Assembly (NCBI RefSeq): GCF_001194135.2
Contig: NC_068985.1
Coordinates: forward strand, 15,556,803 to 15,591,386
Reading direction: 5' to 3'
DNA: 34,584 nt
Source of the DNA: Octopus bimaculoides
Taxonomy: Eukaryota
The translations under genes were made by a program, and so were the position numbers. Below the pieces are notes generated by a model. The model saw only the letters and a program-made list of their open reading frames with translations. It was not told the origin of the DNA and made no database searches. Shown here piece by piece: positions 11,301-30,650 of this stretch (position 1 is its first letter; the number at the start of each line of letters is the position of its first letter).

Positions 11301-14300
11301 ATTATCATGCACATGACAATCATAATGAAATCTTATGCATGGGACTAATATTTAAGTTCCAGTTTGTTTATGCATGTAACAAATGATATTATCAACACTG
11401 ATACATAGAAAGGAATATTAGTTGAAATATAAAGGCAAGTTACCCATCCATTATCATTGCATCAAGAGTTGTTTCTCCAGCTTCATCTGGTCTTCCACCA
11501 TATCCAATACTTTTGCTGCACTGTCGATATCTTTCACACATGGAGCATCCTTGTTCAACAGCATCTAAAGCAGATCTTCCTTTACTGTTGATCACACTCC
11601 AAGCTTTAAAACAGATTAAAAAAACCCAAAAACAAAATCTGAGAGAAAGGGTCATCACAGTTATCTTCTAGCACCACTCCCAACAGACATTACAGTTACC
11701 CCCTGTCATCACTTCTCACAGAACAGACATCAGAGATACTTACCACTCTCACTACCTATACATCCCAATTAGTTACCTCCTCCAACCTTTCATCAACCTG
11801 CTCAACACATCTTTTAATGTACCACATAGATGGAATTTTTGACGCTGAATCCGAATTTGTTATTCATTTATTCTAGAAAAATTTTGCAAAAATGTTACAG
11901 GTGTTCAAAGTTTGATAATTTTCAGAAAACAGAATTTTCAGCCAATCAGAAAACAGCGCGTTCGCTGCCTCTTCCATCATTGGGGTTGGGGGGCATCAAA
12001 ATGTCAAAACATTGCTAGAAAGAACAATAAAAGCATTAAAATATACACGAATGAAGTTAACATTTAAAACATTTGCGAGCAAATTAAATATTTAAAAGCT
12101 ACGAACAAACAAACCAACAGGAGTTGCTAGAAATAACAATCAAAGCATTGTTTAAAACAGACATTTATTAGTTAAGAAAATTCAAGAACGAAAGTTTGCA
12201 ATACACTCTAGGATTTTATAAAATAAACCAGCTGGCCCCGTTCCGTCAAAAATGACGGCTAATTGTAGTATTTTAGAGTTGAAACGCTGATTTCTCTTTT
12301 CAGCGTTGAATGTTNNNNNNNNNNNNNNNNNNNNNNNNNNNNNNNNNNNNNNNNNNNNNNNNNNNNNNNNNNNNNNNNNNNNNNNNNNTACTCACACAAA
12401 GTTGAAACGCTCCCGCTACCAGTTTGCCAACACCCTTCCTTCGTTATTCATCTATCACCCCTTCCTTTCTCATTCATATGTTGTGACGGAGAAAAAAACA
12501 AACGCTTTATTATAGTAGAAGATTATCTTTCTCGTATCTCCTTCTTCTTCTTGTGCGCATGTGCAGCATCTTTGGTTACAATGGAAACAGAGTTTTTTTG
12601 CCACGGTGATGCGTAAAATACTCGCTTCTGATTGGCTAAAATACCCAAATGTTGCAAATTTTAAAGGCTAATAACTCTTAATAATGGATCTGTATGAAAA
12701 ATGAATTTCGTTTTCATAATTAGTATACAAAACCTAATCCATATACCAAATTTGAAAACAATCGGAACAAAATTGTAAACAGTGACGAAAACCACAAAGA
12801 TCCGAAGTTGTTTAATATTAAATGTCTTCAATTATATTATACAAAGCCTCCTCATTCAGCTATCACGTGATCTGGTGATTAGGGGAGTTGGTTGGTCAAG
12901 TACAACTATGCAACCGTGTCCCTACAACAAGTCATTTTCCCCATGGGAAAATCAAGCACCAGGTCACAGAAGATAAAAATAACAAATTTTTCGGCTGTCC
13001 GGCCTCTTTTGCCTCAGGCCCTCTTGTAAACTCCTTTTTTGATTGGTTAACGCTTCCCCCCTTGTTTGAAGGGGGAAGTGTGGTAATGGGGGCGAGATGT
13101 GGAAGTGTTAGCTCCTCAAACTTGTCACCGTCCGAGGAGGAGCTTGTCAAAAGTCTGAAGAGGATAGATGAAGTGATGGAGGTGAAGAACTTTGCAGAGG
13201 CGGTAAAAGATAAAAGTGAGGGCGTGTTTCTGGAGGAGTTGAATAGATTCAAAGGAATCCTTAAAAAGGAGGGGAGCGACGTAAAGATATCTCCTCCCAG
13301 TGAGACAACGGATAAAGTTAAAAGAACCACACTGTACAGAACTTACAGTTTGAAGTTACTACGAATACAGGTTGCAACCAAATCACAGGTTGAAAGGGCA
13401 TTGAGGCCAATATGGAAAGAGGTAAATTACTTTACCTGAGGAGGGAAATATGCAACAGTGGAGGTGCAGTTTGCGTCGGAGACTTTGGCCAAGTAGCATG
13501 CCGTGACTCCCCTCAAAACGTTCGAGGTGGTCCTACCCATCTACCTGGGAAGGCGTGCTTTTAGGGTAAGGGTAGAAGAGACCCCTCCTGAGGTGGATGT
13601 TGCCTGGCTGGTAGCCGCCATCCTATTGGGAATGGCGGATATGATTGTGAACATCCAGGCCAAAAGAATGCCACCAAGGAATTGGCAAGAGCAGGGCCTG
13701 GAAATGATAATCCAGGCCACCCCAGAAGATTTGGAGAGGATGGTGAAAACCATCACAGTCAGAGAGGATGTAAAACTGTTATGGTGGAGGGCATGACGTC
13801 ACGATACTTCAAATGTGGCCAAAACGGTCACACAAAAGCAGAATGTTCTCCACCTGCCGCAAAGAAATCAACGAAAGAAGCCGCACCTCGACCTCTTGCG
13901 ACGTCGTGTGTGAGCGTAAAGGAGCTAGAGAAGGTGGGAGAGAACCAGGAGGCTGAAGAGAAAGAAGGGTGGAATACATCATCGAAAAAAGGGAAAAGAG
14001 GGAAGAAAAGAAACCAAGGCGAAAATGTGAACTCATACGCTACTCCCAGCCATCTTCCAACCTGTCCCACGCCGTCCCGTCTTACCCCTGTAGTCACCAA
14101 CCCTCACCCAGCCCCTCCTGACACAGACACAATGACAAACACACAGGAGCCCGAAATTCCTCCATCCCCACCCCCAAAAGAGAGAAAAAATGTATGCTAT
14201 TTTGTATAGCAATAGAATAAGAGGGAAAATCAACTCTCAAGTGTTTCAAATAAGGGCTGGCCCGAGCACGTCGAATGCGCAATAGTAAGCAACGAAGAGA

Positions 14301-17300: not shown

Positions 17301-18071
17301 GTCTATCCATCTATTACACCCATGGACGTTTCTCGTGAGCGAATATGACTGAGTAGCATGCTTTCGCTAATTGTTTTAGTGAGCCTATATAATCACGAGC
17401 AGATATTGACAGCATCTCGACCCTCCCATCTTTTGATCCAAAGGAACGAGAAGGATGAGACAACCGGAAAGAGACAGGGTGCAGGGTCGCACCAGTTGTC
17501 GTCTGGTCTGACACTCATTTTCAGTTGAGAGGACTGGGGCAATGTGAAAAAAGGCGTCTCGATGAAAGACACAACGCACCGCCTGGTCCAAGCAGCGCTG
17601 GATTAATCATTAAGCAAAATAAGCAGAAAAGTGCTTAGGGTATCACGGGAAATGGGGGGCGGACACCACAGAAACGGTAAATGGTTTACAGCATAAAAGA
17701 TGTCATTTTAAACTTGCAAAAATAATATTCGAAATGGTTTATATGATCAGAAATATAATTTCGAAGTATTCATGGATTTAGGATGTATTCTGTTGGAATT
17801 GTAGTTTATCTTTTCTTTGTTTTCTTGCTATTCTTTCCATGCACACACAGTTTATGTATGGCAATAAAAATATTAATTTAGCACATAAACGATGGTTATT
17901 TAAGTTATTACATACTTTTACATTGCAATAAGAAGAGTAAAAGTATTTATAAAAGTTACCTTTCGCATTTGGTGTAATAAAAGGCCATGTATTTATGACT
18001 ATAGGTAAATTTGAACTCGCAGATCTAGCGACGAAAATTAGAAGGAATAATAAACACACCCTCTGTGACAT
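1506..18071 (-). CDS. AGA: Aspartylglucosaminidase (N4-(beta-N-acetylglucosaminyl)-L-asparaginase), whole gene, 8 coding exons, 1053 nt = 350 aa
   Basis: complement(join(17960-18071, 11444-11603, 9351-9463, 8797-8909, 7441-7643, 4707-4814, 2096-2229, 1506-1615)). All introns are GT-AG with consistent phases. Signal peptide, then [38 protein letters not shown]|TIG autocleavage site (Thr207), RVGDSP, ATGNGD. Confidence 0.96.
1740..2050. repeat. Degenerate (GT)/(GTAT) low-complexity microsatellite in AGA intron 7
   Basis: Direct reading; source of spurious H/T- and V/Y/C-rich ORFs. Confidence 0.85.
2096..2229 (-). CDS. AGA: AGA exon 7 ([44 protein letters not shown])
   Basis: TTTCAG| acceptor, G|GTGGGT donor, 134 nt, within ORF 2082-2276. 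Confidence 0.92.
2340..2514 (+). mobile_element. tRNA-derived SINE family A, 5' half
   Basis: GGCTGTGTGGTAAG...GTTCAGTACCACTG...TTGGGCAAGTG...GAAAGAAGCCC then (TA)n, matching the head of the copies at 21869 and 30141. Confidence 0.8.
2515..4260 (+). mobile_element. Non-autonomous Helitron/Helentron-like element with an internal ~278-bp tandem duplication
   Basis: 5' ACTAGC...ACCTGGCTTTGC. 3' CCAAATTTCAT..ATCGGTGCAGTAGTTTT...ACACACAAACACAC-TTATATAATAGAT. These termini are typical of Lep1/DINE-like elements (family assignment is inference). Confidence 0.55.
4420..4560 (-). mobile_element. SINE family A 3' part, diverged
   Basis: Reverse complement resembles CTTGACAAC..TTACGTCC..AACTTA..ATAAGTAC..GGGGTCGAT of the full copies. 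Confidence 0.5.
4707..4814 (-). CDS. AGA: AGA exon 6 ([35 protein letters not shown])
   Basis: TTTTCAG| acceptor, AG|GTCAGT donor, 108 nt, substrate-binding RVGDSP and ATG motifs. Confidence 0.96.
5116..5318 (+). mobile_element. (GAT)n-tailed retroposon family C, 3' end
   Basis: GCACCCACTACACTCTC..GTTAGGAAGGGCATCCAGC..CCCATGCTAGCATGGAAAGCGGACGTTAAA followed by (TGA)16. Near-identical to 9835-9991. Confidence 0.8.
7040..7300 (+). mobile_element. Family C retroposon copy, diverged
   Basis: GGAAGGGCAT..CCAACCCATGCCAG..GATGTTAAATAATGATGACGATGATG. Confidence 0.6.
7441..7643 (-). CDS. AGA: AGA exon 5 ([13 protein letters not shown]...[31 protein letters not shown]), contains the catalytic Thr
   Basis: TTCAACAG| acceptor, GG|GTTTGT donor, 203 nt, Thr codon at 7521-7523. 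Confidence 0.95.
7690..7874. mobile_element. Possible hAT/Charlie-like MITE
   Basis: Degenerate TIRs ATGTTTTCCAATCTGGGG ... AAAGGTTAGGAAACAATG. Confidence 0.35.
8035..8375 (+). mobile_element. Composite: SINE family D head (8035-8172) joined to a family C tail ending in (GAT)n
   Basis: GGCGAGCTGGCAGAA..GTTCTGAGTTCAAATTC..GACTTTGCCTTTCATCC-like head, then GTTAGGAAGGG..CCCATGCCAGCATGGAAA..(GAT)n. Confidence 0.65.
8797..8909 (-). CDS. AGA: AGA exon 4 ([10 protein letters not shown]...[12 protein letters not shown])
   Basis: TTGCAG| acceptor, AAA|GTAAGT donor, 113 nt, NCQPNFW motif. Confidence 0.95.
9351..9463 (-). CDS. AGA: AGA exon 3 ([37 protein letters not shown])
   Basis: TTTTGTAG| acceptor, G|GTAAAG donor, 113 nt, hand-translated. 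Confidence 0.95.
9610..9991 (+). mobile_element. Family C retroposon with four internal ~65-bp GGCACGT-AAAA repeat units
   Basis: Units start at 9618, 9684, 9748, 9815, followed by the family C tail and (GAT)n. Confidence 0.75.
10230..10305. mobile_element. Right end of a hAT-like MITE with an 18-bp perfect palindrome
   Basis: AGGGTTCATATGAACCCT (10274-10291) followed by GGTCGAGAACCACTG, the reverse complement of a CAGTGGTTCTC-type TIR. Confidence 0.5.
10770..10920 (-). mobile_element. SINE family D copy
   Basis: TTTTGGCACAAGGCCAG...CCCCAGTG..TGGTACTTAT...GAATTTGAA, same as 16620-16750. Confidence 0.6.
11444..11603 (-). CDS. AGA: AGA exon 2 ([20 protein letters not shown]...[10 protein letters not shown])
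   Basis: TTTAAAG| acceptor, GG|GTAAC donor, 160 nt, conserved Ntn-hydrolase alpha-chain motifs. Confidence 0.95.
11829..12829. mobile_element. Probable non-autonomous DNA-transposon remnant spanning an assembly gap
   Basis: Inverted GCCAATCAGAA(11941)/TTCTGATTGGC(12626) motifs, AATAACTCT and ACCAAATTTGAAAACAATCGG blocks. Its 5' GATGGAATTTTTGACGCTGAATC recurs, inverted, near 34490-34510. Confidence 0.35.
12315..12388. other. Assembly gap (74 N)
   Basis: Run of n. Confidence 0.99.
13021..14619 (+). mobile_element. ORF1-only non-LTR retrotransposon derivative (L1/Tx1-like, HAL1-like), 1.6 kb, with a 16-bp TSD
   Basis: Flanked by perfect TCTTTTGCCTCAGGCC at 13005-13020 and 14620-14635. 5' hairpin, disrupted ORF1, 3' hairpin, ATTAAA and a short A-rich end. 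Confidence 0.75.
13086..14209 (+). pseudogene. Disrupted LINE ORF1p/gag-like ORF with a degenerate zinc knuckle
   Basis: Three track ORFs join across in-frame TGA (13437) and TAG (13494) and one frameshift near 13780. [14 protein letters not shown] (13805-13846) is CX2CX4HX4C with the first C changed to Y. Basic/Pro-rich C-terminus. Confidence 0.65.
14652..14733 (+). repeat. Tandem ~41-bp duplication, each unit with a CGTCGTT-CT-AATGACG hairpin
   Basis: TACCGTCGTTCTAATGACG at 14652 and 14693. Confidence 0.85.
16341..16520. mobile_element. DINE/Helentron-like terminal block
   Basis: ATATCTACTACATA..GTGTGTATTTGTTTG..AACTCC..GATTTTGATGAAACTTGAC, the reverse of the 4190-4260-type terminus. Confidence 0.4.
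16620..16750 (-). mobile_element. SINE family D copy
   Basis: TTTTGGCACAAGGCCAG..GTCGAT..GGATGAAAGCAAAGTCGATCTCGGTGGAATTTGAA. Confidence 0.6.
17495..17592 (-). mobile_element. Old SINE family B core fragment
   Basis: Reverse complement GCGTTGTGTCTTT..TTTTCACATTGCCCCAGTCCTCTCAACTGAAAATGAGT matches the core of 23593-23925. Confidence 0.5.
17960..18071 (-). CDS. AGA: AGA exon 1 ([37 protein letters not shown])
   Basis: ATG at 18071, hydrophobic signal peptide, [10 protein letters not shown] motif, donor G|GTAAC at 17959 (phase 1). Confidence 0.93.
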
Positions 18072-18509
18072 GATTCAAGAAGAAATGAAATTTAAGTATA
18101 GGCTTAGAGTTATCTCCCCTTAGACAGAAGGTCAGCCATGTAGCGAGCTTCTAGGAAGGGTAATTCGAAACCACTTATTTCAACTTTAAACTCGTAATTC
18201 ATTTTGTTCCATTGTTTATTCAGTGTTATTTTAATATGTAATTGATTTGTTTTGTAAATGGGTTTCTTGTCTTCTCCAGAAACTCTTAGTTGTTGTTGAA
18301 ACAATACTCTAAAGATATTGAAAAACATATTTTTCACTCAAAATGCTTTGAGCGAATAGAGTAAGTTTGTTCGATCATGTAATGCCGTTGCTACAGTAAG
18401 AGACTTGAAAGCGAAACATAATTGATTTGATGGATTTATGAGGTTAAAATACATGAAGTGTGGAAGCAAATAGAACGTTTTCAATTAGCAAACTCATGAA
18501 ACTTCAACT

Positions 18510-20407: not shown

Positions 20408-20413
20408 CTAACA

Positions 20414-20593
20414 ATGTTGAAGCAATTGAAAGCCTTTGCCAAGAATTACACAGTGCTGCTTGTTATGATCCCTTCAGTAGTTGCCTTACATGTTGGTTGG
20501 TATTATATGCAATTCAATCCTGATTTAGTTGAGCCTGAAAAACAAGAGATTCGGATTTTGGGGAAAATATTTAAGAAAACCCCAAAAGAATAA
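20414..20593 (+). CDS. MKKS upstream ORF 1 microprotein, uMKKS1-like, 59 aa: MLKQLKAFAKNYTVLLVMIPSVVALHVGWYYMQFNPDLVEPEKQEIRILGKIFKKTPKE
   Basis: Lies in exon 20408-20617 (TTTTCTTTTCAG| acceptor, AAA|GTAAGT donor). A at -3. Basic N-terminus plus one hydrophobic segment. YTVLLVMIPSVVALHVGWY resembles human uMKKS1 YKVLVVMVPLVGLIHLGWY (recalled). Confidence 0.85.
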   Translation: MLKQLKAFAKNYTVLLVMIPSVVALHVGWYYMQFNPDLVEPEKQEIRILGKIFKKTPKE

Positions 20594-20749
20594 ATTAGAA
20601 ACTCCAAATTACTCAAAGTAAGTTAATGTTTTTAATAAATATTGGAAAAAAGAAAAACCCATTCCTTAAAATTTTTTTTTGTTTATTTTGTTTTCTGGCT
20701 GATATCAAGTGAGGGCTAAATTATTATACTAGGTGTAACTCTTGTAAGC

Positions 20750-21868: not shown

Positions 21869-22034
21869 AGAAGTGGCTGTGTGGTAAGTAGCTTGCTTAC
21901 GAACCACATGGTTCCGGGTTCATTCCCACTGCGTGGCATCTTGGGCAAGTGTCTTCTACTATAGCCTCGGGCCAACCAAAGCCTTGTGAGTGGATTTGGT
22001 AGACGGAAACTGAAAGAAGCCCACCGTATATATG

Positions 22035-22067
<33 letters not shown>

Positions 22068-22278: not shown

Positions 22279-22409
22279 TCTCACACTGGATTTCACTGAA
22301 AACTATTCAGAGAGTTTCTTCTCATTGATCAAATTGTATTAAGAAATCTTAAACACCACTGATATTAAATTTCTATTTTTTTTAAATACAATTCTAGGAT
22401 TTGCCAAAC

Positions 22410-22574
22410 ATGTCTCTAAGAACAATTTTCCAATCAGCTGCTAATTGGGCCCATAGCAACAAGTTTGTTTCCTTGATAGTCATCACATCTGCTGTGTACT
22501 TAGCAACATATCCACTGAAAACACCAACAGTCGCTACTTCTGAAGAGAGAATTGCTAAATCATCCCCAAAATAA
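22410..22574 (+). CDS. MKKS upstream ORF 2 microprotein, uMKKS2-like, 54 aa: MSLRTIFQSAANWAHSNKFVSLIVITSAVYLATYPLKTPTVATSEERIAKSSPK
   Basis: Lies in exon 22398-22577 (TTCTAG| acceptor, CAG|GTTAGT donor). A at -3. One hydrophobic segment. W-x3-N...V-x-L-x-TY pattern resembles human uMKKS2 WIRKN...VHLGTY (recalled). Confidence 0.75.
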   Translation: MSLRTIFQSAANWAHSNKFVSLIVITSAVYLATYPLKTPTVATSEERIAKSSPK

Positions 22575-23439
22575 CAGGTTAGTTACAAATTTCAAAAATA
22601 TTTTAATTGCTTTAATCTTGTATTCAGGGACTGATCTTCAAAAACTATTCTTTATAGATTAGCAAAAGAAAATTGTTTATTTTATTTTTTGTTCCTCTTG
22701 GCTTTTAAAATATGTATGTGGAAATGAACATGTAATTCTCCTTTGTAGTATGAAATATGGATTCAGAGAATTGTGTGGCTATCATAGAAAGCTCTTCTAA
22801 CAAACTCGGCTAACAGATCACATAGTAATGCAGAATAAATATCCATGTAGCTGGATGCCCTCCTCAATGCCAACCACTTTACAGAGAGTACTGAGTGCTT
22901 TTATGTGGCACTGGCACTAAGTATGATTACTAAGTACCTTGCAAGACATGACCCCTCGACTGAGAGGGGACTAGTTTTGAGGATGTAATTTTATTCCAGA
23001 GGATGCGAGGTTGAAGTATGATGGAGGAGGTAGGTGTGTGTCAGGGAGGTAATAAGTGGCAGCAGAGACAACTCCTAATATACAAATTAGGAGAAGCCAA
23101 CATAGGAACCTTTATGCAGTCACTCAGACTAGAAAACAACAGGGAATCTCCTTCAAATCACAATCTACTGTATTAAATAAAACATTTTAGGTAATGTAGT
23201 GATCACATCCATGAATATCTCTACTCATGGCTCTACTCAATCAGGATTGACCGGTAGCAATACAAGAACAGTAGCAGATATAGCTAAAATTATTGCAAAG
23301 TATATTTTGCTCGTGAGATTGTCTGTCTCACAATATTTATAGAGAGATTTTCTTAAATTAAAATTATCAATTATATGAAGAAAAAATCTGTTCTTTAAAG
23401 ATTTTTCTATATAGTTAATCATTTTTAATTGAAGAAAAT

Positions 23440-23590
<151 letters not shown>

Positions 23591-23592
23591 AA

Positions 23593-23925
23593 GGCGCATG
23601 GCTCAGTGGTTAGAGTGTTGAGCTTACGATTGTGAGGTTGTGAGTTCGAATCCCGGACCGGGCTGCGTGTTGTGTTCTTGAGCAAGACACTTTATTTCAC
23701 GTTGCTCCAGTTCACTCAGCTGTAGAAATGAGTTGCGATGTCACTGGTGCCAAGCTGTATCGGCCCCTTTGCCTTTCCCTTGGATAACGCTGGTGGCGTG
23801 GAGAGGGGAGGCTGGTATGCATGGGCGACTGTTGGTCTGCCATAAAAAACCTTGCCCGGACTTGTGCTTGGGATGGTAACTTTCTAGGTGCAATCCCATG
23901 GTCAGTTATGACCGTATGGTGTCTC
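23593..23925 (+). mobile_element. tRNA-derived SINE family B, well preserved
   Basis: Pol III A box TGGCTCAGTGG (23599-23609) and B box GTTCGAATCC (23644-23653), then core TTGTGTTCTTGAGCAAGACAC..CAGCTGTAGAAATGAGT. Confidence 0.8.
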
Positions 23926-24159
23926 AGCATATATATGTACATACACACACACATACACATACATACATACATACTTACCCCTCTGTCTCTATGTATATAT
24001 CTGTTTGTGTGTGTGTGTGTATATACATACAAGCACGCATGTGTATATATACGCAAGCATGTGTATATATACACAAGCACACATATTTACCTGTCTGTCT
24101 GTCTGTCTATATATATATATATATATATCTGTATATATTTCAGAGTTTATAATTGAATA

Positions 24160-25150
24160 ATGCAGGAAGTTACTGAAACTAAAATCCTACGTGGCAAACT
24201 CACAGACAAGGAGACAGTGCACCAACTCAATTCCCTTAGGCATTTATTTTCCACCACAGTTGGCCCTTATGGAGGTATTAAGCTACTGCGTAATAACTGC
24301 GGTGGTCATATCACACTGACAAGTTCATCATCCAGGCTGCTGGCTGCTCTGCGACCTACAAATCCTTTAGCTCGACTCATAATTGAAGCCTGTTCAAAGC
24401 ATTCACATACCTATGGAGATGGAGCTCTCTTTATGGCTCACTTTATCCTAATTCTGATAGACAAAGCTTTGAAACTTGATTTAGATCATAGGTTGATTAC
24501 CAAAGTAAATTCATTTCTTCTTGAATTATTTCTTAGTTATTTAAAATCAGATGATTTCTCCTGTAAAATGGCTGTAGAAATATCTGATGTTAATTCTTTG
24601 TGTCAGGTGGCCAGTACGATGTTGTCATCGAAACCATTGTACCAGCTAGACGAACAGCTACTGAAGTTGATGAGTTCTGTACTCTTAGAGACTTTCATTA
24701 GAAGCCTTCCTTCTGAAAGACTGGACAGTTCCTTAAGACCCGTCTTAGACAATATACACATCATTGGTATTCCTGGTGAAGAAACACATAATTCTTTCTG
24801 TTGTGAAGGATTATTGCTTGAGGCTACAAACATCAAAGAAGTGCTGTCATGGCAAACACAGAGAGAATCTCTGGAGAATATTTGTACAGTTGTAATAAAT
24901 GTATCTATGGCAGGAGATTCTATTGAGCTACCTCAGTTGACTTATGCCCGTACCAGTCTTAAAGAACTTGAGCAAAGTTTTCTTACTCATATGGAGTCAT
25001 TCTGTTCTGAACTCATACCAAAAGGCATTAGAATTTTATTCTGCCAGAAAGTGGTTCACCCTTGTCTAAAAGACCAACTGAGAAGAAACGGTGTATTGGT
25101 TCTTGATCGTCTTGGTGCTTTGCTGTGCTCCAAAGTTATCAATTTAACAG
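24160..25150 (+). CDS. MKKS: MKKS coding exon 1 (exon starts 24144 with 16 nt of leader)
   Basis: ORF 24160-25158. TTTCAG| acceptor at 24143, in-frame TGA two codons upstream of the ATG, donor ACAG|GTAATT. Confidence 0.93.
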
Positions 25151-28100
25151 GTAATTAGTTAATTATTTTAAACTGACATTATGTTGTATTAAATTATCTG
25201 TTTAACCCTTTAGTGTTTAAACCAGCCACATCTGGCCCAAATATTCTACATGTTTTATATTTGAACTAGCCATATCTAATCTCTCACACCTAACCTACAT
25301 TGACATTCTAAAAATAAATATTCACATCATTGAGTTTTCAAAGCTATGAGATAATGTATGATTAATTCAAAACAATTTGAGTGAAAAGGCATTACATTTA
25401 ACAGAGTAATTTGAACATTAAAGGGTTAATATGTCCTTATAGAAAATGAACAAGTGCCAATGTTAGCTTTGGCCAAGTTTCTACAGTTGGATGCCCTTTC
25501 TGATGCCAATCACTAGATGCTTTTTTCATGTCACCATCCCTAGTGAGGTCTCTAAAAGAACAGGAAAATAATAAAAACTCCTTTGATTATGTGTGTGTGT
25601 GTGTGTGTTTGGCAGGGAGTATTTGAGAGAGTGGGGAGGTGGTTTTATGCTGGATGTTGAGAGGTTGAAGTGTGATAGTCTTGCTATAGAAGAGATAAAT
25701 GGCTATGCCACATATAATGGTGGATGGGAGTAACTGGAAAGAAGGTAGAGATGCTGGTGACTAGATACCAGATCATCTCAAAATACAAGGTGAGTGTAAG
25801 AGAGGATAGAGGCAGTGAATTGGGGTGGGAAGGTAATAGTTAGAAATAGGGGTAGAAATGAATGTAATGAATGAATGAGAATGGATATGCAATTGATGGG
25901 AGATAGCAGGATAGAGAGAGCATAGGGTTAGAGAGATAGAAGTGGTTCAAGAAGGAGAATGTATCAGAAAGTAGGGTGGTAGGGATGTGATGTGCATGAG
26001 GTTGTAGCGGTGGGGAGGGAGATGGTAGAAATAAATAAGAGGGATGGGCAATGATAGGTGATGCATGATGGGCGATATGGTAATGTGTTGAGAATGATAG
26101 TAGATATGAGAGATGTTAAGACAGAGTATGGCAGAGAGAGTGCAATGACTGAAGGTACAGAAAATTGAGCAGTGAAAATAGTGTGGGGAAAGGATGATAA
26201 TGTGAATGAGAGATGGAAGGGGTTCCAAGAGGGAAGGGAGGTAATTGGAAGTACAAAGAAAAAGTTAGATGTAAAATGTGTTGGTTTTGCTCTCAAGTGA
26301 TTGCTGCAGCAGAGTAGTGCCATAGACAGAGGAGTGATGTTTGCTAGAGAATGAAATGTGGGGAATGCTTGACAGAGTGGAAAGGGTGGAAAGGCAGCGC
26401 TCTAATCAAGTTTGACCTGGGGCTAAACATCTACAGCTGGATGCCCTTGCTGATGCCAATCACTAGATGCTTTTTTTCATGTCACCATCCCTAGTGAGAT
26501 CTCTAAGTAACTTGAAAGATAAGAAAAGAACAAAAAAATAATAAAAACTCCCTAGATTATGCATGTGTGTGCGGGTGAGTATTTGTGAGAGTGGGGAGGT
26601 GGGGGGCTAAACAACAACACTGCTAGTAGTGATTTAATCTTGATAGTCTCTACTGTTTAAAATATATTTTCAGGTTCCGTTCCAATTAGTTCATTTTCAT
26701 CAGCTTGCTCTCCAGATCAGTTAGGGAGAATCAGTAAATTCTCTGTCATGGATGTTTTCGGAAAGCAGTGGCTTCATCTGAATCAGATTTCCAGCAGTTT
26801 AGTTACCCTTGTAGTTTGTAGTCAAATGGAAGAACAGCTTGAAGAATTAAAGGTTGGTTTGTCTCCTTTCTACAAGTGTTAGAATTGCAAGGAATTCTTT
26901 CCTTTATTTATTTATATTTTAATTTCATCATTCGCTTGAATATATAGTGTTTGCGAGTGGAGAAAGCTTTCATCAACAGCTAGTTATTGTCTCATACTGA
27001 GGATGGGTAACCATTTCAGAAACCATGATCTGTGAGTATTATGTAAGGTTGGAGATGGGAGCGATGACCTCCCTTGCAAACACTATACGGACACAGACTG
27101 TGTGTTCATAACCAGCAGGAAAAGATGTTTTCCTGGGGGCTTAAACAGCAGTAATATCATCCTTTATAGGACTGCCACATTCTGTTGGTGAATAAACTTT
27201 ACTATATATATGTATATATATATATAGTTGGTATTATGCAAAAATATCGTAAGAATGTTGCTTTTTCAGAAAACGAAAACATAGTCTCACCATTCCATAG
27301 CAAAACCATTGTACTACACTTTGACAATTTTTGATATCTTGGCATCTGAAGTAGCTGGAGATGTGATAGTTCGACCCAAAGAACCAGCTATTCCAAGTAA
27401 AAATAAATATTGATAAAAATGCATTTGGCCAAATTTTGACATATGACAAATTCTCTCCTATTCATTCTGCCATGTAGCAACATTAAATGATGATGGTATA
27501 AAGCTTTTAGAATGCCAAATGTAAAAAGAATGGTAGTAGAATGTGAATATTTGGGTAAAAAAAAAATATTTAGAGAAGTGTTGTTTATAATTCATTAATT
27601 TTTTAAAATAAAATTTATTAGAATTCTATTTTCTTTTATGAAATATTATTAAAAAAAAAAGATTAGAAGGAAAAATAGTGCATGGTAGCAAAATACTTCA
27701 GTTTTTATAGAGCCACATCTTTAAGATACAAGTATATTTATGAGATCAAAATATTTTATAGGTGTGGGTCTAGCTGTGTGGTTAAGAAAGGTGTTTCCCA
27801 ATCATATGGTTGGGTTCAGTCCCACTGCATGGCATCTTGGGCATGTCTTCTTATACAGCCCTGGGCTGACCAAAACCTCATCTGTCAATTTGGTAGATGG
27901 AAACTGAAAGAAGCCCATTGTACATGTGTTGTGTGTGTGTGTTTACCCATGTCATGACATGTCATGATTGTAAATCAACCTTCTAAGAAACACATGTCAG
28001 GTCTTGGGGAAACAGGTGAAGGTTGGCTGTAGGAAACCTGCCTCAACAAATTCTCTCCTATTCATTCTGCCATGTAAAAGTAGACATTAAAACAATGAGG

Positions 28101-28689
28101 ATGAATGTATTCATTTCTCTAAATTCCATCAGTTATGCAACAGAAGTGACACTCAGTGATAATCCTTCTAAAGTAGTAGGATAAGTTGGTATTTGTAAGC
28201 CTGTGGAATGTCTTTGAGTGGATTTTAAGTTGAGAGAGGGATTTATGTAGTTCATGTTTAATTCCAGTGTTTTTTTTTTTTTATATATATTTTGTTCAAT
28301 TTTACAGGTGAATTGCAACAATGTGATGTTAGCATTCCAGCACCTTCTCAGGACACCGGCTGTACTGTATGGTGGAGGCTGCTGGCAGTTCACTTTGGCT
28401 AACGAGCTTAGAGTTGAGGTAAGACTATTTTTTCTTTATTGGTTACTTGGAATATTTTCTTATTTGTTCTATCCTTTACTCATCTCTTCAGTATTTAGTC
28501 TTTCTCCTTGCTTCTCCAACTCATCTTCTCTTGAAATATTTATTATACGTTTCCTTGCTTCCCAACTACATGGATTCAGGGTCAGCCCCACTGCATGGCA
28601 TGTTGGGCAAATGTCTCCTGTTATAGCATCTAGCTGACCAAAAGCTTTATGAGTGAATGGATTTGGTTGGTGGAAATTGAAAGAAGCCT

Positions 28690-28734
<45 letters not shown>

Positions 28735-29537
28735 TCATGATCACCATCATTTAACATCTGTTGTCCATGCTGGTATGGCTTGGACTGTTTTACCAGTCAT
28801 TCTTCTTCAGATTCTGAGTTCAAATTCTGCCAAGGTCAACTTTGCCTTTCATCCTTTCAGGGTTGATAAAATAAGTACCAGTGGAAAGCTGATATAATTG
28901 ACTTTCCCTCCCCTAAAATTAATGGACTTGTGCCTAAATTTGAAACCATTATTATTATTATTAACCCATGCTAGCATGGAAAGCGGACGTTAAACGACGA
29001 TGATTATTATAATTATTATTATTATTATTATTATTATTATTTATTTTTTTTTTTTGTCTATTTCAGGTTTCTGAAAATTTAGAAAGCTTCTCCAGTAAAC
29101 TGGATTGTTCCGAATCCCAGTTATTGCAGCTGTGTGATCATCTATGCACAAGTTTGGAACAAGCTGTTTCCCCATCTTCTCAGCAGAGTAAAAAATGTTT
29201 CACCCATCCTTCAGCTGGTCATCTTTGGATACAGGACGACCATGAAGTTAATGTAGAAAAAACTTGTTCATGTGGTTTGCTTTGTTGTAGTTTGTCAGAT
29301 TTGAAACTTCAACCTTTAGAACATTCTCCTTCATTTGACAGATTTTCTAAGAAAGAGCTTCATGGCTCTTACAACCCTCTTGATACAATATCCAGTTCTG
29401 AACCTCCAAAGAAACCTCTTCTAATGGACTGCTTTATTCCATGGAAAACAGCTGTAGAAATATCAGTACTTCTAGCCAATATGGCTCTTAGTACCAATCA
29501 GTTTATCTTTGACACCAACTGTAAACCATCAACATAA
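24160..29537 (+). CDS. MKKS: McKusick-Kaufman/Bardet-Biedl syndrome 6 chaperonin-like protein, 4 coding exons, 1752 nt = 583 aa
   Basis: join(24160-25150, 26674-26852, 28308-28418, 29067-29537), GT-AG, phases 1/0/0. Motifs VGPYGGIK, CQKVVHPCLK, LDRLG, GGGCW, GHLW, LLMDC. Large first coding exon followed by three smaller ones, as in vertebrate MKKS. Confidence 0.93.
25206..25425. mobile_element. piggyBac-type MITE (220 bp) with TTAA target duplication
   Basis: TTAA(25202-25205)|CCCTTTAGTGTTTAAA ... TTTGAACATTAAAGGG|TTAA(25426-25429); TIRs 14/16. Confidence 0.8.
25480..26602 (+). repeat. Local ~165-170-bp direct duplication (25480-25642 / 26430-26602)
   Basis: Shared TGATGCCAATCACTAGATGCTTTTTT..CATGTCACCATCCCTAGTGAG..AATAATAAAAACTCC..GAGAGTGGGGAGGTGG. 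Confidence 0.85.
26674..26852 (+). CDS. MKKS: MKKS coding exon 2 (GSVPISSF...QMEEQLEELK)
   Basis: TTTTCAG| acceptor, AAG|GTTGGT donor, 179 nt, open in the required phase. Confidence 0.9.
27760..27940 (+). mobile_element. SINE family A, 5' half
   Basis: GCTGTGTGGTTAAG..GGTTCAGTCCCACTGC..GAAAGAAGCCCATTG. Confidence 0.7.
28308..28418 (+). CDS. MKKS: MKKS coding exon 3 (VNCNNVMLAFQHLLRTPAVLYGGGCWQFTLANELRVE)
   Basis: TTTACAG| acceptor, GAG|GTAAGA donor, 111 nt, chaperonin GGG motif. Confidence 0.92.
28550..28732 (+). mobile_element. SINE family A, 5' half, ending in (TG)n
   Basis: CTTGCTTCCCAACTACATGG..CCCACTGC..GAAAGAAGCC then (GT)n. Confidence 0.7.
28805..28950 (+). mobile_element. SINE family D fragment
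   Basis: TTCTGAGTTCAAATTCTGCCAAGGTCAACTTTGCCTTTCATCCTTTC..AAGTACCAG..CTTGTGCC. Confidence 0.6.
29067..29537 (+). CDS. MKKS: MKKS terminal coding exon (VSENLESF...FIFDTNCKPST*)
   Basis: Poly-T + TTTCAG| acceptor, continuous with ORF 29124-29537, TAA at 29535-29537. Confidence 0.92.
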   Translation, partial: VSENLESFSSKLDCSESQLLQLCDHLCTSLEQAVSPSSQQSKKCFTHPSAGHLWIQDDHEVNVEKTCSCGLLCCSLSDLKLQPLEHSPSFDRFSKKELHGSYNPLDTISSSEPPKKPLLMDCFIPWKTAVEISVLLANMALSTNQFIFDTNCKPST

Positions 29538-29978: not shown

Positions 29979-30428
29979 TGCACTGGTGCGATTGTGGTAA
30001 GAAGCTTGCTTCCCAACCACATGGTTTCAGGTTCAGTCTTACTGCATGACATTTTGGGCCTGTATCTTCAACTCTAGTCCAAGGTGAGCCAAGGCCTTGT
30101 GCGTAGATTTGGTAGTTGGAAACTGAAAGAAGTCCATTTTGCAGGAGTGGCTGTGTGGTAAGTAGCTTGCTTACCAACCACATGGTTCCGGGTTCAGTCC
30201 CACTGTGTAGCACCTTGGGCAAGTACCTTCTACTATAGCCTCGGGCTGACCAAAACCTTGTGAGTTGGTTTGGTAGACGGAAACTGAAAGAAGCCTGTCG
30301 TATATATGTATANNNNNNNNNNNNNNNNNNNNNNNNNNNNNNNNNNNNNNNNNNNNNNNNNNNNNNNNNNNNNNNNNNNNNNNNNNNNNNNNNNNNNNNN
30401 NNNNNNNNNNNNNNNNNNNNNNNNNNNN

Positions 30429-30462
<34 letters not shown>

Positions 30463-30650
30463 TTGTCCCCCCAACATCGCTTGACAACCGATGCTGGTGT
30501 GCTTACGTCCCCGTAACTTAGCGGTTCAGCAAAAGATCCGATAGAATAAGTACTAGACTTACAAAGAATAAGTCCTGGGGTCGATTTGCTCGACTAAAGG
30601 CGGTGCTCCAGCATGGCCGCAGTCAAATGACTGAAACAAGTAAAAGAGTA
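29979..30650 (+). mobile_element. Two head-to-tail SINE family A copies: truncated 29979-30138, full 30141-30650 with a gap inside its microsatellite
   Basis: Repeated head sequence; tail GACTGAAACAAGTAAAAGAGTA. Confidence 0.85.
30313..30428. other. Assembly gap (116 N) in (TA)n
   Basis: Run of n. Confidence 0.99.

What the first reader, a model, noticed from the sequence alone, without database searches (positions are those of the whole stretch)
20414..20593. uORF1: 59-aa uMKKS1-like microprotein with a conserved Y-x-VL-x-VM-x-P...H-x-GWY segment
Seen: MLKQLKAFAKNY is basic with no acidic residue (targeting-like), then an ~19-aa hydrophobic stretch VLLVMIPSVVALHVGWYYM, then a charged tail. 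The match to human uMKKS1 (YKVLVVMVPLVGLIHLGWY, recalled) covers the Pro and the intramembrane His-x-Gly-Trp-Tyr. Inference: conserved polar and aromatic residues in a transmembrane helix point to a specific partner, such as a respiratory-chain complex or assembly factor, rather than a purely cis-regulatory uORF.
Basis: partly seen in the sequence, partly recalled or inferred. Interest (0 to 1): 0.8.

Follow-up and report, generated by a model that had tools for sequence, protein, structure and literature searches.

The report
Octopus orthologue of microprotein uMKKS1
A small exon in the 5' leader of the octopus MKKS gene encodes a 59-residue membrane microprotein that is a true orthologue of human uMKKS1; the family spans bilaterian animals and survives as a stand-alone gene in three insects, from a class reported to lack MKKS, so the peptide probably has a job of its own.

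Summary
Window 20414-20593 (+) is an intact 59-codon ORF in a splice-bounded 210-nt exon, 3.6 kb upstream of the first coding exon of an MKKS-type chaperonin. It is homologous to published human uMKKS1: BLASTP E 2e-10, and hhalign against 27 mammals gives 96.8% probability. No composition-preserving shuffle out of 20,000 reached its score. An exhaustive profile search found 68 cluster representatives. Named members come from lamprey to human, amphioxus, cuttlefish, octopus and three insects. The small ORF lies upstream of a chaperonin gene in mammals, amphioxus, cephalopods and two unnamed lineages, and cuttlefish mRNAs carry uORF1, uORF2 and MKKS together. In flea, sand fly and beetle it is a stand-alone gene, and a published survey found no MKKS in insect proteomes. 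The peptide is as conserved as MKKS itself. This supports an autonomous membrane protein, not only a cis-acting uORF. Mitochondrial localisation and a predicted complex IV link come from human literature and were not tested here. Verdict: a new, unannotated member of a known family; the invertebrate range may be new.

The parts
18098..18159 (+). Candidate non-coding 5' exon A of the MKKS transcription unit (approximate 5' end; donor AGG|GTAAT after 18159)
   Evidence: The N-terminal part of the O. vulgaris model P0001 maps here at 75% identity, but with an in-frame TAG in this species, so it is UTR rather than coding.
20408..20617 (+). Exon B, 210 nt, carrying the whole of uORF1
   Evidence: Acceptor cttttcag| before 20408 and donor |GTAAGT at 20618. 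The B-to-C junction is the one used in the O. vulgaris annotation.
20414..20593 (+). uORF1: 59-aa uMKKS1 orthologue (the finding); start context acaATGt, with A at -3
   Evidence: Intact and the same length in O. vulgaris, with no indels and 5 synonymous / 5 non-synonymous codon changes.
20450..20512 (+). Codons 13-33: predicted membrane helix holding the conserved core V14, V17, M18, P20, H26 (20489-20491), G28, W29 (20498-20500)
   Evidence: AlphaFold2 places helices at 2-11 and 13-33, with pLDDT 92-96 over residues 1-30. Per-column conservation; H26 and W29 invariant in 50 sequences.
22398..22577 (+). Exon C, 180 nt, carrying the whole of uORF2
   Evidence: Acceptor ttctag| before 22398 and donor CAG|GTTAGT after 22577. 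The C-terminal part of P0001 maps at 22400-22441.
22410..22574 (+). uORF2: 54-aa second microprotein with one hydrophobic helix, in the position of vertebrate uMKKS2
   Evidence: Homologous to the cuttlefish uORF2 (E 1.6e-16) and to an ORF in L006. Intact in O. vulgaris. Sequence homology to vertebrate uMKKS2 is not demonstrated.
24144..25155 (+). Exon D: 16 nt of leader plus the first coding exon of the MKKS-type chaperonin (ATG at 24160; 3' end approximate)
   Evidence: Pfam Cpn60_TCP1 E 2.1e-34. Scores 116.6 bits against the mammalian MKKS CDS, versus 45 bits for the best solved group II chaperonin and about 30 for CCT subunits.
26664..29537 (+). Remaining MKKS coding exons, approximately 26664-26873, 28302-28541 and 29082-29537 (stop)
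   Evidence: tblastn of full-length cuttlefish-type and P0072-type chaperonins onto the window. Exon ends were not refined.

Best explanation
The ORF is the octopus orthologue of uMKKS1 (human LOC128706665, 'alternative protein MKKS'). It is the first cistron of a conserved polycistronic 5' leader: uORF1, uORF2, then MKKS.

Shown here:
- It is homologous to vertebrate uMKKS1.
- It lies on its own exon upstream of an MKKS-type chaperonin gene.
- The same order is present on mature cuttlefish mRNAs and in mammals. Amphioxus has the small ORF upstream of a chaperonin gene.
- The family has an invariant His and Trp near the end of a predicted helix.
- Three insects keep it as a separate gene.

Inferred:
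- It is translated from a good-context AUG into a single-pass membrane protein: a short basic N-terminal helix, a roughly 20-residue membrane helix with a Pro and the H-x-G-W motif at its C-terminal end, and a charged tail.
- It acts in trans by binding a membrane partner through that motif.

By transfer from human data only: it sits in a mitochondrial membrane, possibly with complex IV or one of its assembly factors.

As a side effect, the two roughly 55-codon uORFs, with 36-nt and 19-nt spacers in the spliced-leader model, should hold down MKKS translation, as shown for human.
For: Homology. Whole-library profile search: 68 hits at E<=1e-3, 15 at <=1e-10.

Synteny with a Cpn60_TCP1 gene:
- window
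- O. vulgaris
- Sepia esculenta transcripts (species from PMC10571815)
- mammalian transcripts
- amphioxus
- two unnamed lineages

Constraint on the protein:
- Peptide identity is at least that of MKKS in the same pairs: 49 vs 44%, 40 vs 34%, 36 vs 33%.
- No indels between the two Octopus species, although the introns have many.
- H26 and W29 are invariant.

Autonomy: stand-alone annotated genes in Ctenocephalides felis, Lutzomyia longipalpis and Hypothenemus hampei, with no MKKS-like sequence in the flea and sand fly loci by tblastn and none called near the beetle gene. Insect proteomes lack BBS6/10/12 (PMC12491567).

Structure: AF2 mean pLDDT 87, helices at 2-11 and 13-33.

Human literature: protein detected by mass spectrometry (PMC8448870); mitochondrial by immunofluorescence (PMC7066179); mitochondrial membrane fraction and repression of MKKS translation (PMC11837024; PMC7530721); predicted complex IV link (bioRxiv 10.1101/2024.10.01.615885).
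Against: - There is no octopus transcript, ribosome-profiling or proteomic evidence. The exact peptide has never been called as a gene in the public collection.
- The O. vulgaris annotation puts the small-ORF exons and MKKS in two separate gene models, so co-transcription in octopus is inferred from cuttlefish.
- The Octopus-Octopus codon comparison (5 synonymous, 5 non-synonymous) is too small to prove purifying selection on its own.
- Conserved positions are not significantly confined to one helical face.
- Mitochondrial location and the complex IV link are transferred from human; the latter is a computational prediction in a preprint.
- Absence of MKKS from the three specific insects was checked only within +-10 kb and by a literature statement about other insect proteomes.
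Confidence: 0.8

Rival explanations
1. Purely cis-regulatory conserved-peptide uORF. The peptide sequence is conserved because the nascent chain stalls ribosomes and so represses MKKS translation, and the released peptide has no function.
For: In human reporter assays the repressive effect of the MKKS CPuORF depends at least partly on its encoded sequence (PMC7530721). uORFs repress MKKS translation (PMC11837024). In the octopus leader model the spacers are very short, 36 and 19 nt.
Against: - Conservation is concentrated in a hydrophobic helix with invariant His and Trp, not in the C-terminus.
- The peptide persists as a stand-alone gene in three insects with no chaperonin downstream, in a class reported to lack MKKS.
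- The human protein is stable enough to be seen by mass spectrometry and localises to mitochondria.
Confidence: 0.08
2. Independent small gene in octopus. Exons A, B and C form their own short transcript or transcripts, as annotated in O. vulgaris, and MKKS is transcribed separately. On this view the ORF is not a uORF in this species, although it is still the uMKKS1 orthologue.
For: The O. vulgaris annotation has two gene models, P0001 (exons A-B-C) and a 583-aa Cpn60_TCP1 gene starting at the coding exon. The review PMC11837024 describes polyadenylation signals within the human MKKS 5' UTR.
Against: - Cuttlefish mRNA contigs carry uORF1, uORF2 and the full MKKS CDS on one molecule.
- Exon C ends in a consensus donor and exon D begins with a consensus acceptor 16 nt before the MKKS ATG.
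- P0001 is itself a faulty model that splices out codons 28-54 of an ORF intact in that genome.
- The only AATAAA close to exon B is not conserved in O. vulgaris.
Confidence: 0.15
3. Chance ORF whose resemblance to uMKKS1 reflects generic membrane-helix composition.
For: Short hydrophobic peptides often give spurious matches. No Pfam family covers it.
Against: 0 of 20,000 block-preserving shuffles reach the score, and it is the best of 204 window ORFs by a wide margin. Whole-library E-values go down to 1e-33 with a profile that includes it. Position upstream of MKKS is conserved in several phyla.
Confidence: 0.01

Closest known systems
Human uMKKS1 (NCBI LOC128706665; UniProt 'alternative protein MKKS', Q9HB66 per PMC11837024), 63 aa
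   Same: Same position as the first long uORF of the MKKS leader. Similar size (59 vs 63 aa). Same architecture and core: Y-x-V-L-x-V-M-x-P-x-V-x-x-x-H-x-G-W-Y, 11 of 19 identical. A second small ORF with a membrane helix follows, then MKKS.
   Different: About 26-39% identity overall. The N-terminus is more basic. The tail is unrelated in sequence beyond a shared Pro. Translation, localisation and repression of MKKS are shown for human only.
Vertebrate 'uncharacterized LOC128706665 homolog' RefSeq entries (lamprey to mammals)
   Same: Same family by profile search. Already annotated as proteins by NCBI.
   Different: The octopus peptide is not annotated anywhere. The one O. vulgaris entry is a mis-spliced 79-aa model that lacks the G-W-Y part.
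Stand-alone insect genes XP_026480461.1 (cat flea), XP_055679613.1 (sand fly) and KAL1500760.1 (coffee berry borer)
   Same: Same helix and H-x-G-W motif. 36-40% identical to the octopus peptide. Whole-library E 1e-6 to 4e-5 with a mammal+octopus profile.
   Different: Monocistronic, with no chaperonin nearby. Flea and sand fly, and several unnamed members, have a distinct tail motif, (D/E)-x-x-(R/K)-(E/D)-L-P-(I/V).
Other small mitochondrial proteins encoded by small ORFs (MIEF1 microprotein, BRAWNIN/UQCC6, mitoregulin)
   Same: The same kind of object: a protein of about 50-70 aa encoded by a uORF or small ORF. BRAWNIN and mitoregulin are respiratory-chain-associated mitochondrial membrane peptides (PMC7066179, PMC11837024).
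   Different: No sequence relationship was detected. No Pfam family recurs across 50 members scanned at E<=10. This is a functional analogy only.

Membership tests
uMKKS1 / LOC128706665 microprotein family | Significant sequence similarity to experimentally detected human uMKKS1 | tested here: met
   BLASTP E 2e-10. hhalign against 27 mammals, probability 96.8%. 0 of 20,000 block-preserving shuffles reach the score.
uMKKS1 / LOC128706665 microprotein family | Encoded upstream of the MKKS coding sequence, on the same strand, in the 5' leader | tested here: met
   The genomic order uORF1 exon, uORF2 exon, MKKS-type coding exon is seen in the window and in O. vulgaris. The mature-mRNA arrangement is shown for cuttlefish but not directly for octopus.
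uMKKS1 / LOC128706665 microprotein family | Peptide of about 60 aa with one hydrophobic helix carrying V..VM.P....H.GW | tested here: met
   59 aa. AF2 helix at 13-33. H26 and W29 invariant; V14, V17, G28, P20 and M18 at 72-92%.
uMKKS1 / LOC128706665 microprotein family | Followed by a second microprotein uORF (uMKKS2) | tested here: inconclusive
   A 54-aa ORF with one hydrophobic helix occupies the equivalent position and is conserved in cephalopods and L006. Similarity to vertebrate uMKKS2 is not significant: hhalign probability 1.6%, shuffle p 0.08-0.12.
uMKKS1 / LOC128706665 microprotein family | Translated in vivo and localised to a mitochondrial membrane | not testable with these tools
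   Known for human only (PMC8448870; PMC7066179; PMC11837024).
uMKKS1 / LOC128706665 microprotein family | [quoted passage not shown] | not testable with these tools
   Human reporter data only. In octopus, only the leader anatomy is available: A at -3, and 36-nt and 19-nt spacers.
MKKS/BBS6 chaperonin-like protein (the downstream gene) | Group II chaperonin (Cpn60_TCP1) fold, divergent from the CCT subunits, and closest to vertebrate MKKS | tested here: met
   Pfam PF00118 E 2.1e-34. 116.6 bits against the 570-aa CDS downstream of mammalian uMKKS1, versus at most 45 bits against any solved chaperonin.
MKKS/BBS6 chaperonin-like protein (the downstream gene) | Distinguishable from the paralogues BBS10 and BBS12 | not tested
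Orthology rests on similarity to MKKS, similar length (583 aa in O. vulgaris; 570 aa in mammals) and the shared uORF.

The most novel reading that the evidence does not exclude
uMKKS1 is an ancient bilaterian membrane microprotein, probably an accessory or assembly factor of mitochondrial complex IV. Its gene has been co-transcribed with MKKS on a polycistronic mRNA since before the protostome-deuterostome split, and it was kept as an independent gene when insects lost MKKS. If so, the MKKS locus would be one of the oldest conserved polycistronic mRNAs in animals. The invariant His and Trp would mark the partner-binding or cofactor-binding site.
Probability: 0.35. Interest if true: 0.7.

Novelty: new member of a known kind. 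Interest (0 to 1): 0.5.

Why it matters
uMKKS1 is a well-documented human uORF-encoded protein, yet its function is unknown. The texts I read call it conserved in mammals (PMC11837024) or simply evolutionarily conserved (PMC8448870).

- Finding it in a cephalopod, with the same three-cistron layout, pushes the origin of both the peptide and the arrangement back to early bilaterians. That rests on these searches; I could not exclude an earlier report of the range.
- Stand-alone copies in three insects, from a class whose surveyed proteomes lack MKKS, amount to a natural experiment arguing that the peptide works on its own.
- This gives a clean genetic test: knock out the insect gene, where there is no MKKS to confound the result.
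- It narrows mutagenesis to two invariant residues, His26 and Trp29.
- It flags an unannotated gene in one Octopus genome and a mis-annotated one in O. vulgaris.

Tried and rejected
1. Word-indexed search with the octopus peptide found only the mis-modelled O. vulgaris entry. The family appeared only with the exhaustive profile search.
2. Pfam: no hit for the peptide and no recurring weak family across 50 members at E<=10. From memory I considered a relationship to BRAWNIN (DUF4516) and PET117; neither appeared in that scan, so nothing is claimed.
3. One-face hypothesis: the helical moment of conservation at 100 degrees is not significant (p=0.11). Rejected as evidence.
4. Conserved alternative poly(A) site after exon B, as in human. 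There is one AATAAA at 20634, which is about the chance expectation, and it is not conserved in O. vulgaris. Rejected.
5. uORF2 homology to vertebrate uMKKS2: not significant. Left as positional equivalence.
6. dN/dS between the two Octopus species: 5 synonymous and 5 non-synonymous codons in each uORF, too few to decide.
7. PDB sequence search with the chaperonin exon shows only distant group II chaperonins; no MKKS structure is available to compare.
8. Exact look-up of the octopus peptide in public assemblies: not on record, so no octopus transcript evidence.
9. The specific complex IV partner is not named in the text of the interactome preprint; it appears only in a figure.
10. The taxonomic range that the ESUCA paper records for the MKKS CPuORF is in a figure and a supplementary table that are not held. 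I cannot exclude that lophotrochozoan hits were already tabulated there.
11. tRNA and Rfam scans of the window found nothing.
12. No fold search was run on the AF2 model, because a single helix gives meaningless matches.

Full report
**1. What is in the sequence**

Window 20414-20593 (+) is an intact ATG-to-TAA ORF of 59 codons, MLKQLKAFAKNYTVLLVMIPSVVALHVGWYYMQFNPDLVEPEKQEIRILGKIFKKTPKE. The window is AT-rich eukaryotic DNA with assembly gaps (1187 N).

The only database relative of the peptide in the word-indexed search is a hypothetical protein of Octopus vulgaris. Non-coding DNA is about 87% identical to the O. vulgaris locus. The window therefore comes from another Octopus species.

The ORF lies in a 210-nt exon (20408-20617) with a polypyrimidine/AG acceptor and a GTAAGT donor.

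**2. Is the resemblance to uMKKS1 real?**

The recalled fragment was accurate.

- BLASTP aligns residues 5-46 of the octopus peptide to 3-44 of human without gaps: 15/42 identical, 27/42 similar, single-comparison E 2e-10.
- A profile of 27 mammalian orthologues matches it with hhalign probability 96.8%, E 2.9e-10.
- Membrane helices give spurious matches, so I shuffled the peptide within its three compositional blocks. None of 20,000 shuffles reached the observed Smith-Waterman score (83; mean 26, sd 6.2, max 69).
- Among all 204 ATG-ORFs of at least 30 aa in the window, this one is the best match to human uMKKS1 by far; the next scores 39.

**3. Genomic context**

- A 332-aa ORF starting at 24160 is a Cpn60_TCP1 domain (E 2.1e-34). 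It is only distantly related to solved CCT and thermosome chains (at most 45 bits).
- Mammalian transcript contigs that carry uMKKS1 have a 570-aa Cpn60_TCP1 CDS downstream, which by the literature is MKKS.
- The octopus exon scores 116.6 bits against that CDS. The downstream gene is therefore MKKS-type. BBS10 and BBS12 were not available for comparison.
- Its further coding exons map at about 26664-26873, 28302-28541 and 29082-29537.
- Between uORF1 and MKKS lies a second splice-bounded 180-nt exon (22398-22577) containing a complete 54-codon ORF (22410-22574) with one hydrophobic helix.
- A candidate non-coding first exon lies at about 18098-18159.
- Joining exons B, C and D gives uORF1, 36 nt, uORF2, 19 nt, then the MKKS ATG. 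All three AUGs have A at -3, and there are no other long ORFs.

**4. The family**

An exhaustive HMMER search of 1.84 billion cluster representatives, using a profile of the octopus peptide plus mammals, returned 68 proteins at whole-library E<=1e-3 and 15 at <=1e-10. Nearly all are 50-130 aa (sequences).

Named members:
- mammals, birds, reptiles, amphibians, a teleost and a lamprey, which NCBI names 'LOC128706665 homolog'
- amphioxus Branchiostoma lanceolatum, two copies
- cat flea, the sand fly Lutzomyia longipalpis and the beetle Hypothenemus hampei
- P0054, which comes from runs that belong to Sepia esculenta larval transcriptomes

In an alignment of 50 diverse representatives:
- His26 and Trp29 are invariant.
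- V14 is 92%, V17 88%, G28 82%, L15 and P20 74%, M18 72%.
- A juxtamembrane L-Q-x-N-P-x-F segment is 50-70% conserved.

No Pfam family covers any member.

AlphaFold2 with this alignment predicts helices at 2-11 and 13-33 and a lower-confidence hairpin at 45-54 (mean pLDDT 87; 92-96 for residues 1-30).

**5. Linkage to MKKS**

The small ORF is followed on the same strand by a Cpn60_TCP1 gene or CDS in:
- mammals
- amphioxus
- O. vulgaris
- cuttlefish
- a marine metatranscriptome organism

In the transcript contigs the leader always holds two small ORFs before the chaperonin CDS. Those mRNAs are therefore tricistronic, like the human one.

Its similarity to vertebrate uMKKS2 is not significant, so only position and architecture are shared.

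**6. Evidence that the peptide matters as a protein**

(a) In the same species pairs the peptide is at least as conserved as the first 330 residues of MKKS: Octopus-Sepia 49 vs 44%, L006 40 vs 34%, P0072 species 36 vs 33%, mammal 26-39 vs 27.5%.

(b) Between the two Octopus species both small ORFs keep exact length with no indels, while the flanking introns carry many. Substitutions are 5 synonymous and 5 mostly conservative non-synonymous codons each, which fits constraint but is too few to prove it.

(c) In flea, sand fly and beetle the homologue is a stand-alone annotated gene flanked by unrelated genes.
- tblastn finds no MKKS-like sequence within +-10 kb of the flea and sand fly genes.
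- For the beetle only the called genes were inspected; none is a chaperonin.
- Another member is followed only by a convergent COG6 gene.
- A published survey found no BBS6, BBS10 or BBS12 in insect proteomes and inferred early loss (PMC12491567). BBS6 is otherwise widespread in Metazoa (PMC10074162).

Keeping the peptide after the downstream cistron was lost argues against a purely cis-regulatory role. This step is an inference. MKKS absence was not verified genome-wide in these three species.

**7. Mechanism**

Shown: homology, exon anatomy, conserved cistron order, the invariant residues, a confident helical model, and uncoupling from MKKS in insects.

Inferred: the peptide is translated, inserts as a single-pass membrane protein, and uses the His-x-Gly-Trp end of the helix to bind a partner.

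Transferred from human work:
- detection by mass spectrometry (PMC8448870)
- mitochondrial localisation (PMC7066179)
- mitochondrial membrane fraction and repression of MKKS translation (PMC11837024)
- partly sequence-dependent repression (PMC7530721)
- a coevolution and deep-learning prediction linking LOC128706665 to complex IV components or assembly factors (bioRxiv 10.1101/2024.10.01.615885)

The partner is not named in the text of that preprint. I put the orthology at about 0.95, an autonomous membrane-protein function at about 0.75, and a complex IV role at about 0.3.

**8. Known or new?**

uMKKS1 itself is known, and vertebrate orthologues are annotated. The octopus peptide is not annotated.
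- The exact sequence is absent from the public gene-call collection.
- The O. vulgaris entry P0001 is a faulty model. It splices codons 28-54 out of an ORF that is intact in that genome and reads through non-coding exons.

The papers I could search do not describe invertebrate orthologues, the tricistronic layout in cephalopods, or the insect stand-alone genes. However, the ESUCA table that records the taxonomic range of the MKKS CPuORF is not held, so prior tabulation cannot be excluded.

I therefore file the finding as a new member of a known kind, with a possibly new evolutionary point attached.

**9. Verdict**

Interest is moderate: the object is not a new kind of thing. The bilaterian range, the two invariant residues and the insect natural experiment do make the open question of uMKKS1 function more directly testable.

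Noticed in passing
window 22398-22577 (ORF 22410-22574, +): A second complete small ORF on its own exon, 54 aa: MSLRTIFQSAANWAHSNKFVSLIVITSAVYLATYPLKTPTVATSEERIAKSSPK. It has one hydrophobic helix, is conserved in O. vulgaris, cuttlefish and L006, and sits where vertebrate uMKKS2 sits. Sequence homology to uMKKS2 is not significant.
   Followed up: yes
window 17778-18071 (-) and 11440-11658 (-): A head-to-head neighbour gene of the Asparaginase_2 family (aspartylglucosaminidase-like by my recollection of that family). Its first-exon ATG is at 18071, only about 30-90 bp from MKKS exon A, which implies a shared bidirectional promoter. O. vulgaris has the same arrangement (L001).
   Followed up: partly
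L001 10001-15441 (O. vulgaris, protein P0001): The annotated 79-aa 'hypothetical predicted protein' is a mis-model. It starts in non-coding exon A, removes an 80-nt pseudo-intron from inside uORF1 (losing the G-W-Y part and most of the tail), and runs into exon C out of frame with uORF2. The intact 59-aa and 54-aa ORFs are both present in that genome.
   Followed up: yes
P0033 (Liparis tanakae TNN27614.1, 125 aa): A snailfish model in which uMKKS1 and a uMKKS2-like sequence are fused in one reading frame. It may be a natural fusion or a model artefact. If real, it hints that the two peptides work together.
   Followed up: partly
P0048, P0055, P0096 (130-217 aa; the tails resemble named teleost members): Longer forms share a conserved extension after the uMKKS1 part (EELVxGGxRSFxxxP...AEGDEE). 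This suggests an alternative longer isoform in one vertebrate group.
   Followed up: no
P0086 (145 aa, unnamed source): A uMKKS1-like N-terminus and helix followed by the start of a DnaJ domain (Pfam E 5.3e-06, 26.9 bits, just under the 27.8-bit cut-off). It may be a fusion or read-through model.
   Followed up: partly
P0056, P0058, P0061, P0068, P0079, P0085, P0088, P0093: A subfamily, which includes the flea and sand fly proteins, has a distinct tail motif, (D/E)-x-x-(R/K)-(E/D)-L-P-(I/V/L). Cephalopods and vertebrates lack it.
   Followed up: partly
window 12888-14209 (+), GC 0.42-0.48: A GC-rich island with overlapping ORFs of 97-183 aa. One has a weak zinc-knuckle hit (zf-CCHC, E 0.01, below cut-off). 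It may be a degenerate retroelement gag inside an intron of the neighbouring gene.
   Followed up: partly
window 21950-22035 and 27844-27929; similar ORF text at about 2282-2557 and 30260-30484; several copies in L001: An interspersed repeat, 78% identical between two copies in MKKS introns, usually followed by TA/TG microsatellite. It is probably a SINE-like element. ARAGORN and Rfam found nothing.
   Followed up: partly
window 23437-24140: About 700 bp of (TA)n/(TG)n microsatellite and related low-complexity sequence runs right up to the acceptor site of the first MKKS coding exon.
   Followed up: no
window about 30.3 kb and about 32.1-33.1 kb: Assembly gaps (1187 N in total). The second spans about 1 kb and is flanked by TA repeats.
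   Followed up: no
L015 (amphioxus) and P0161: Branchiostoma lanceolatum has two nearly identical copies of the peptide gene on the same chromosome (Hypp2666 and Hypp2675). The one examined lies 1.1 kb upstream of a Cpn60_TCP1 gene.
   Followed up: partly
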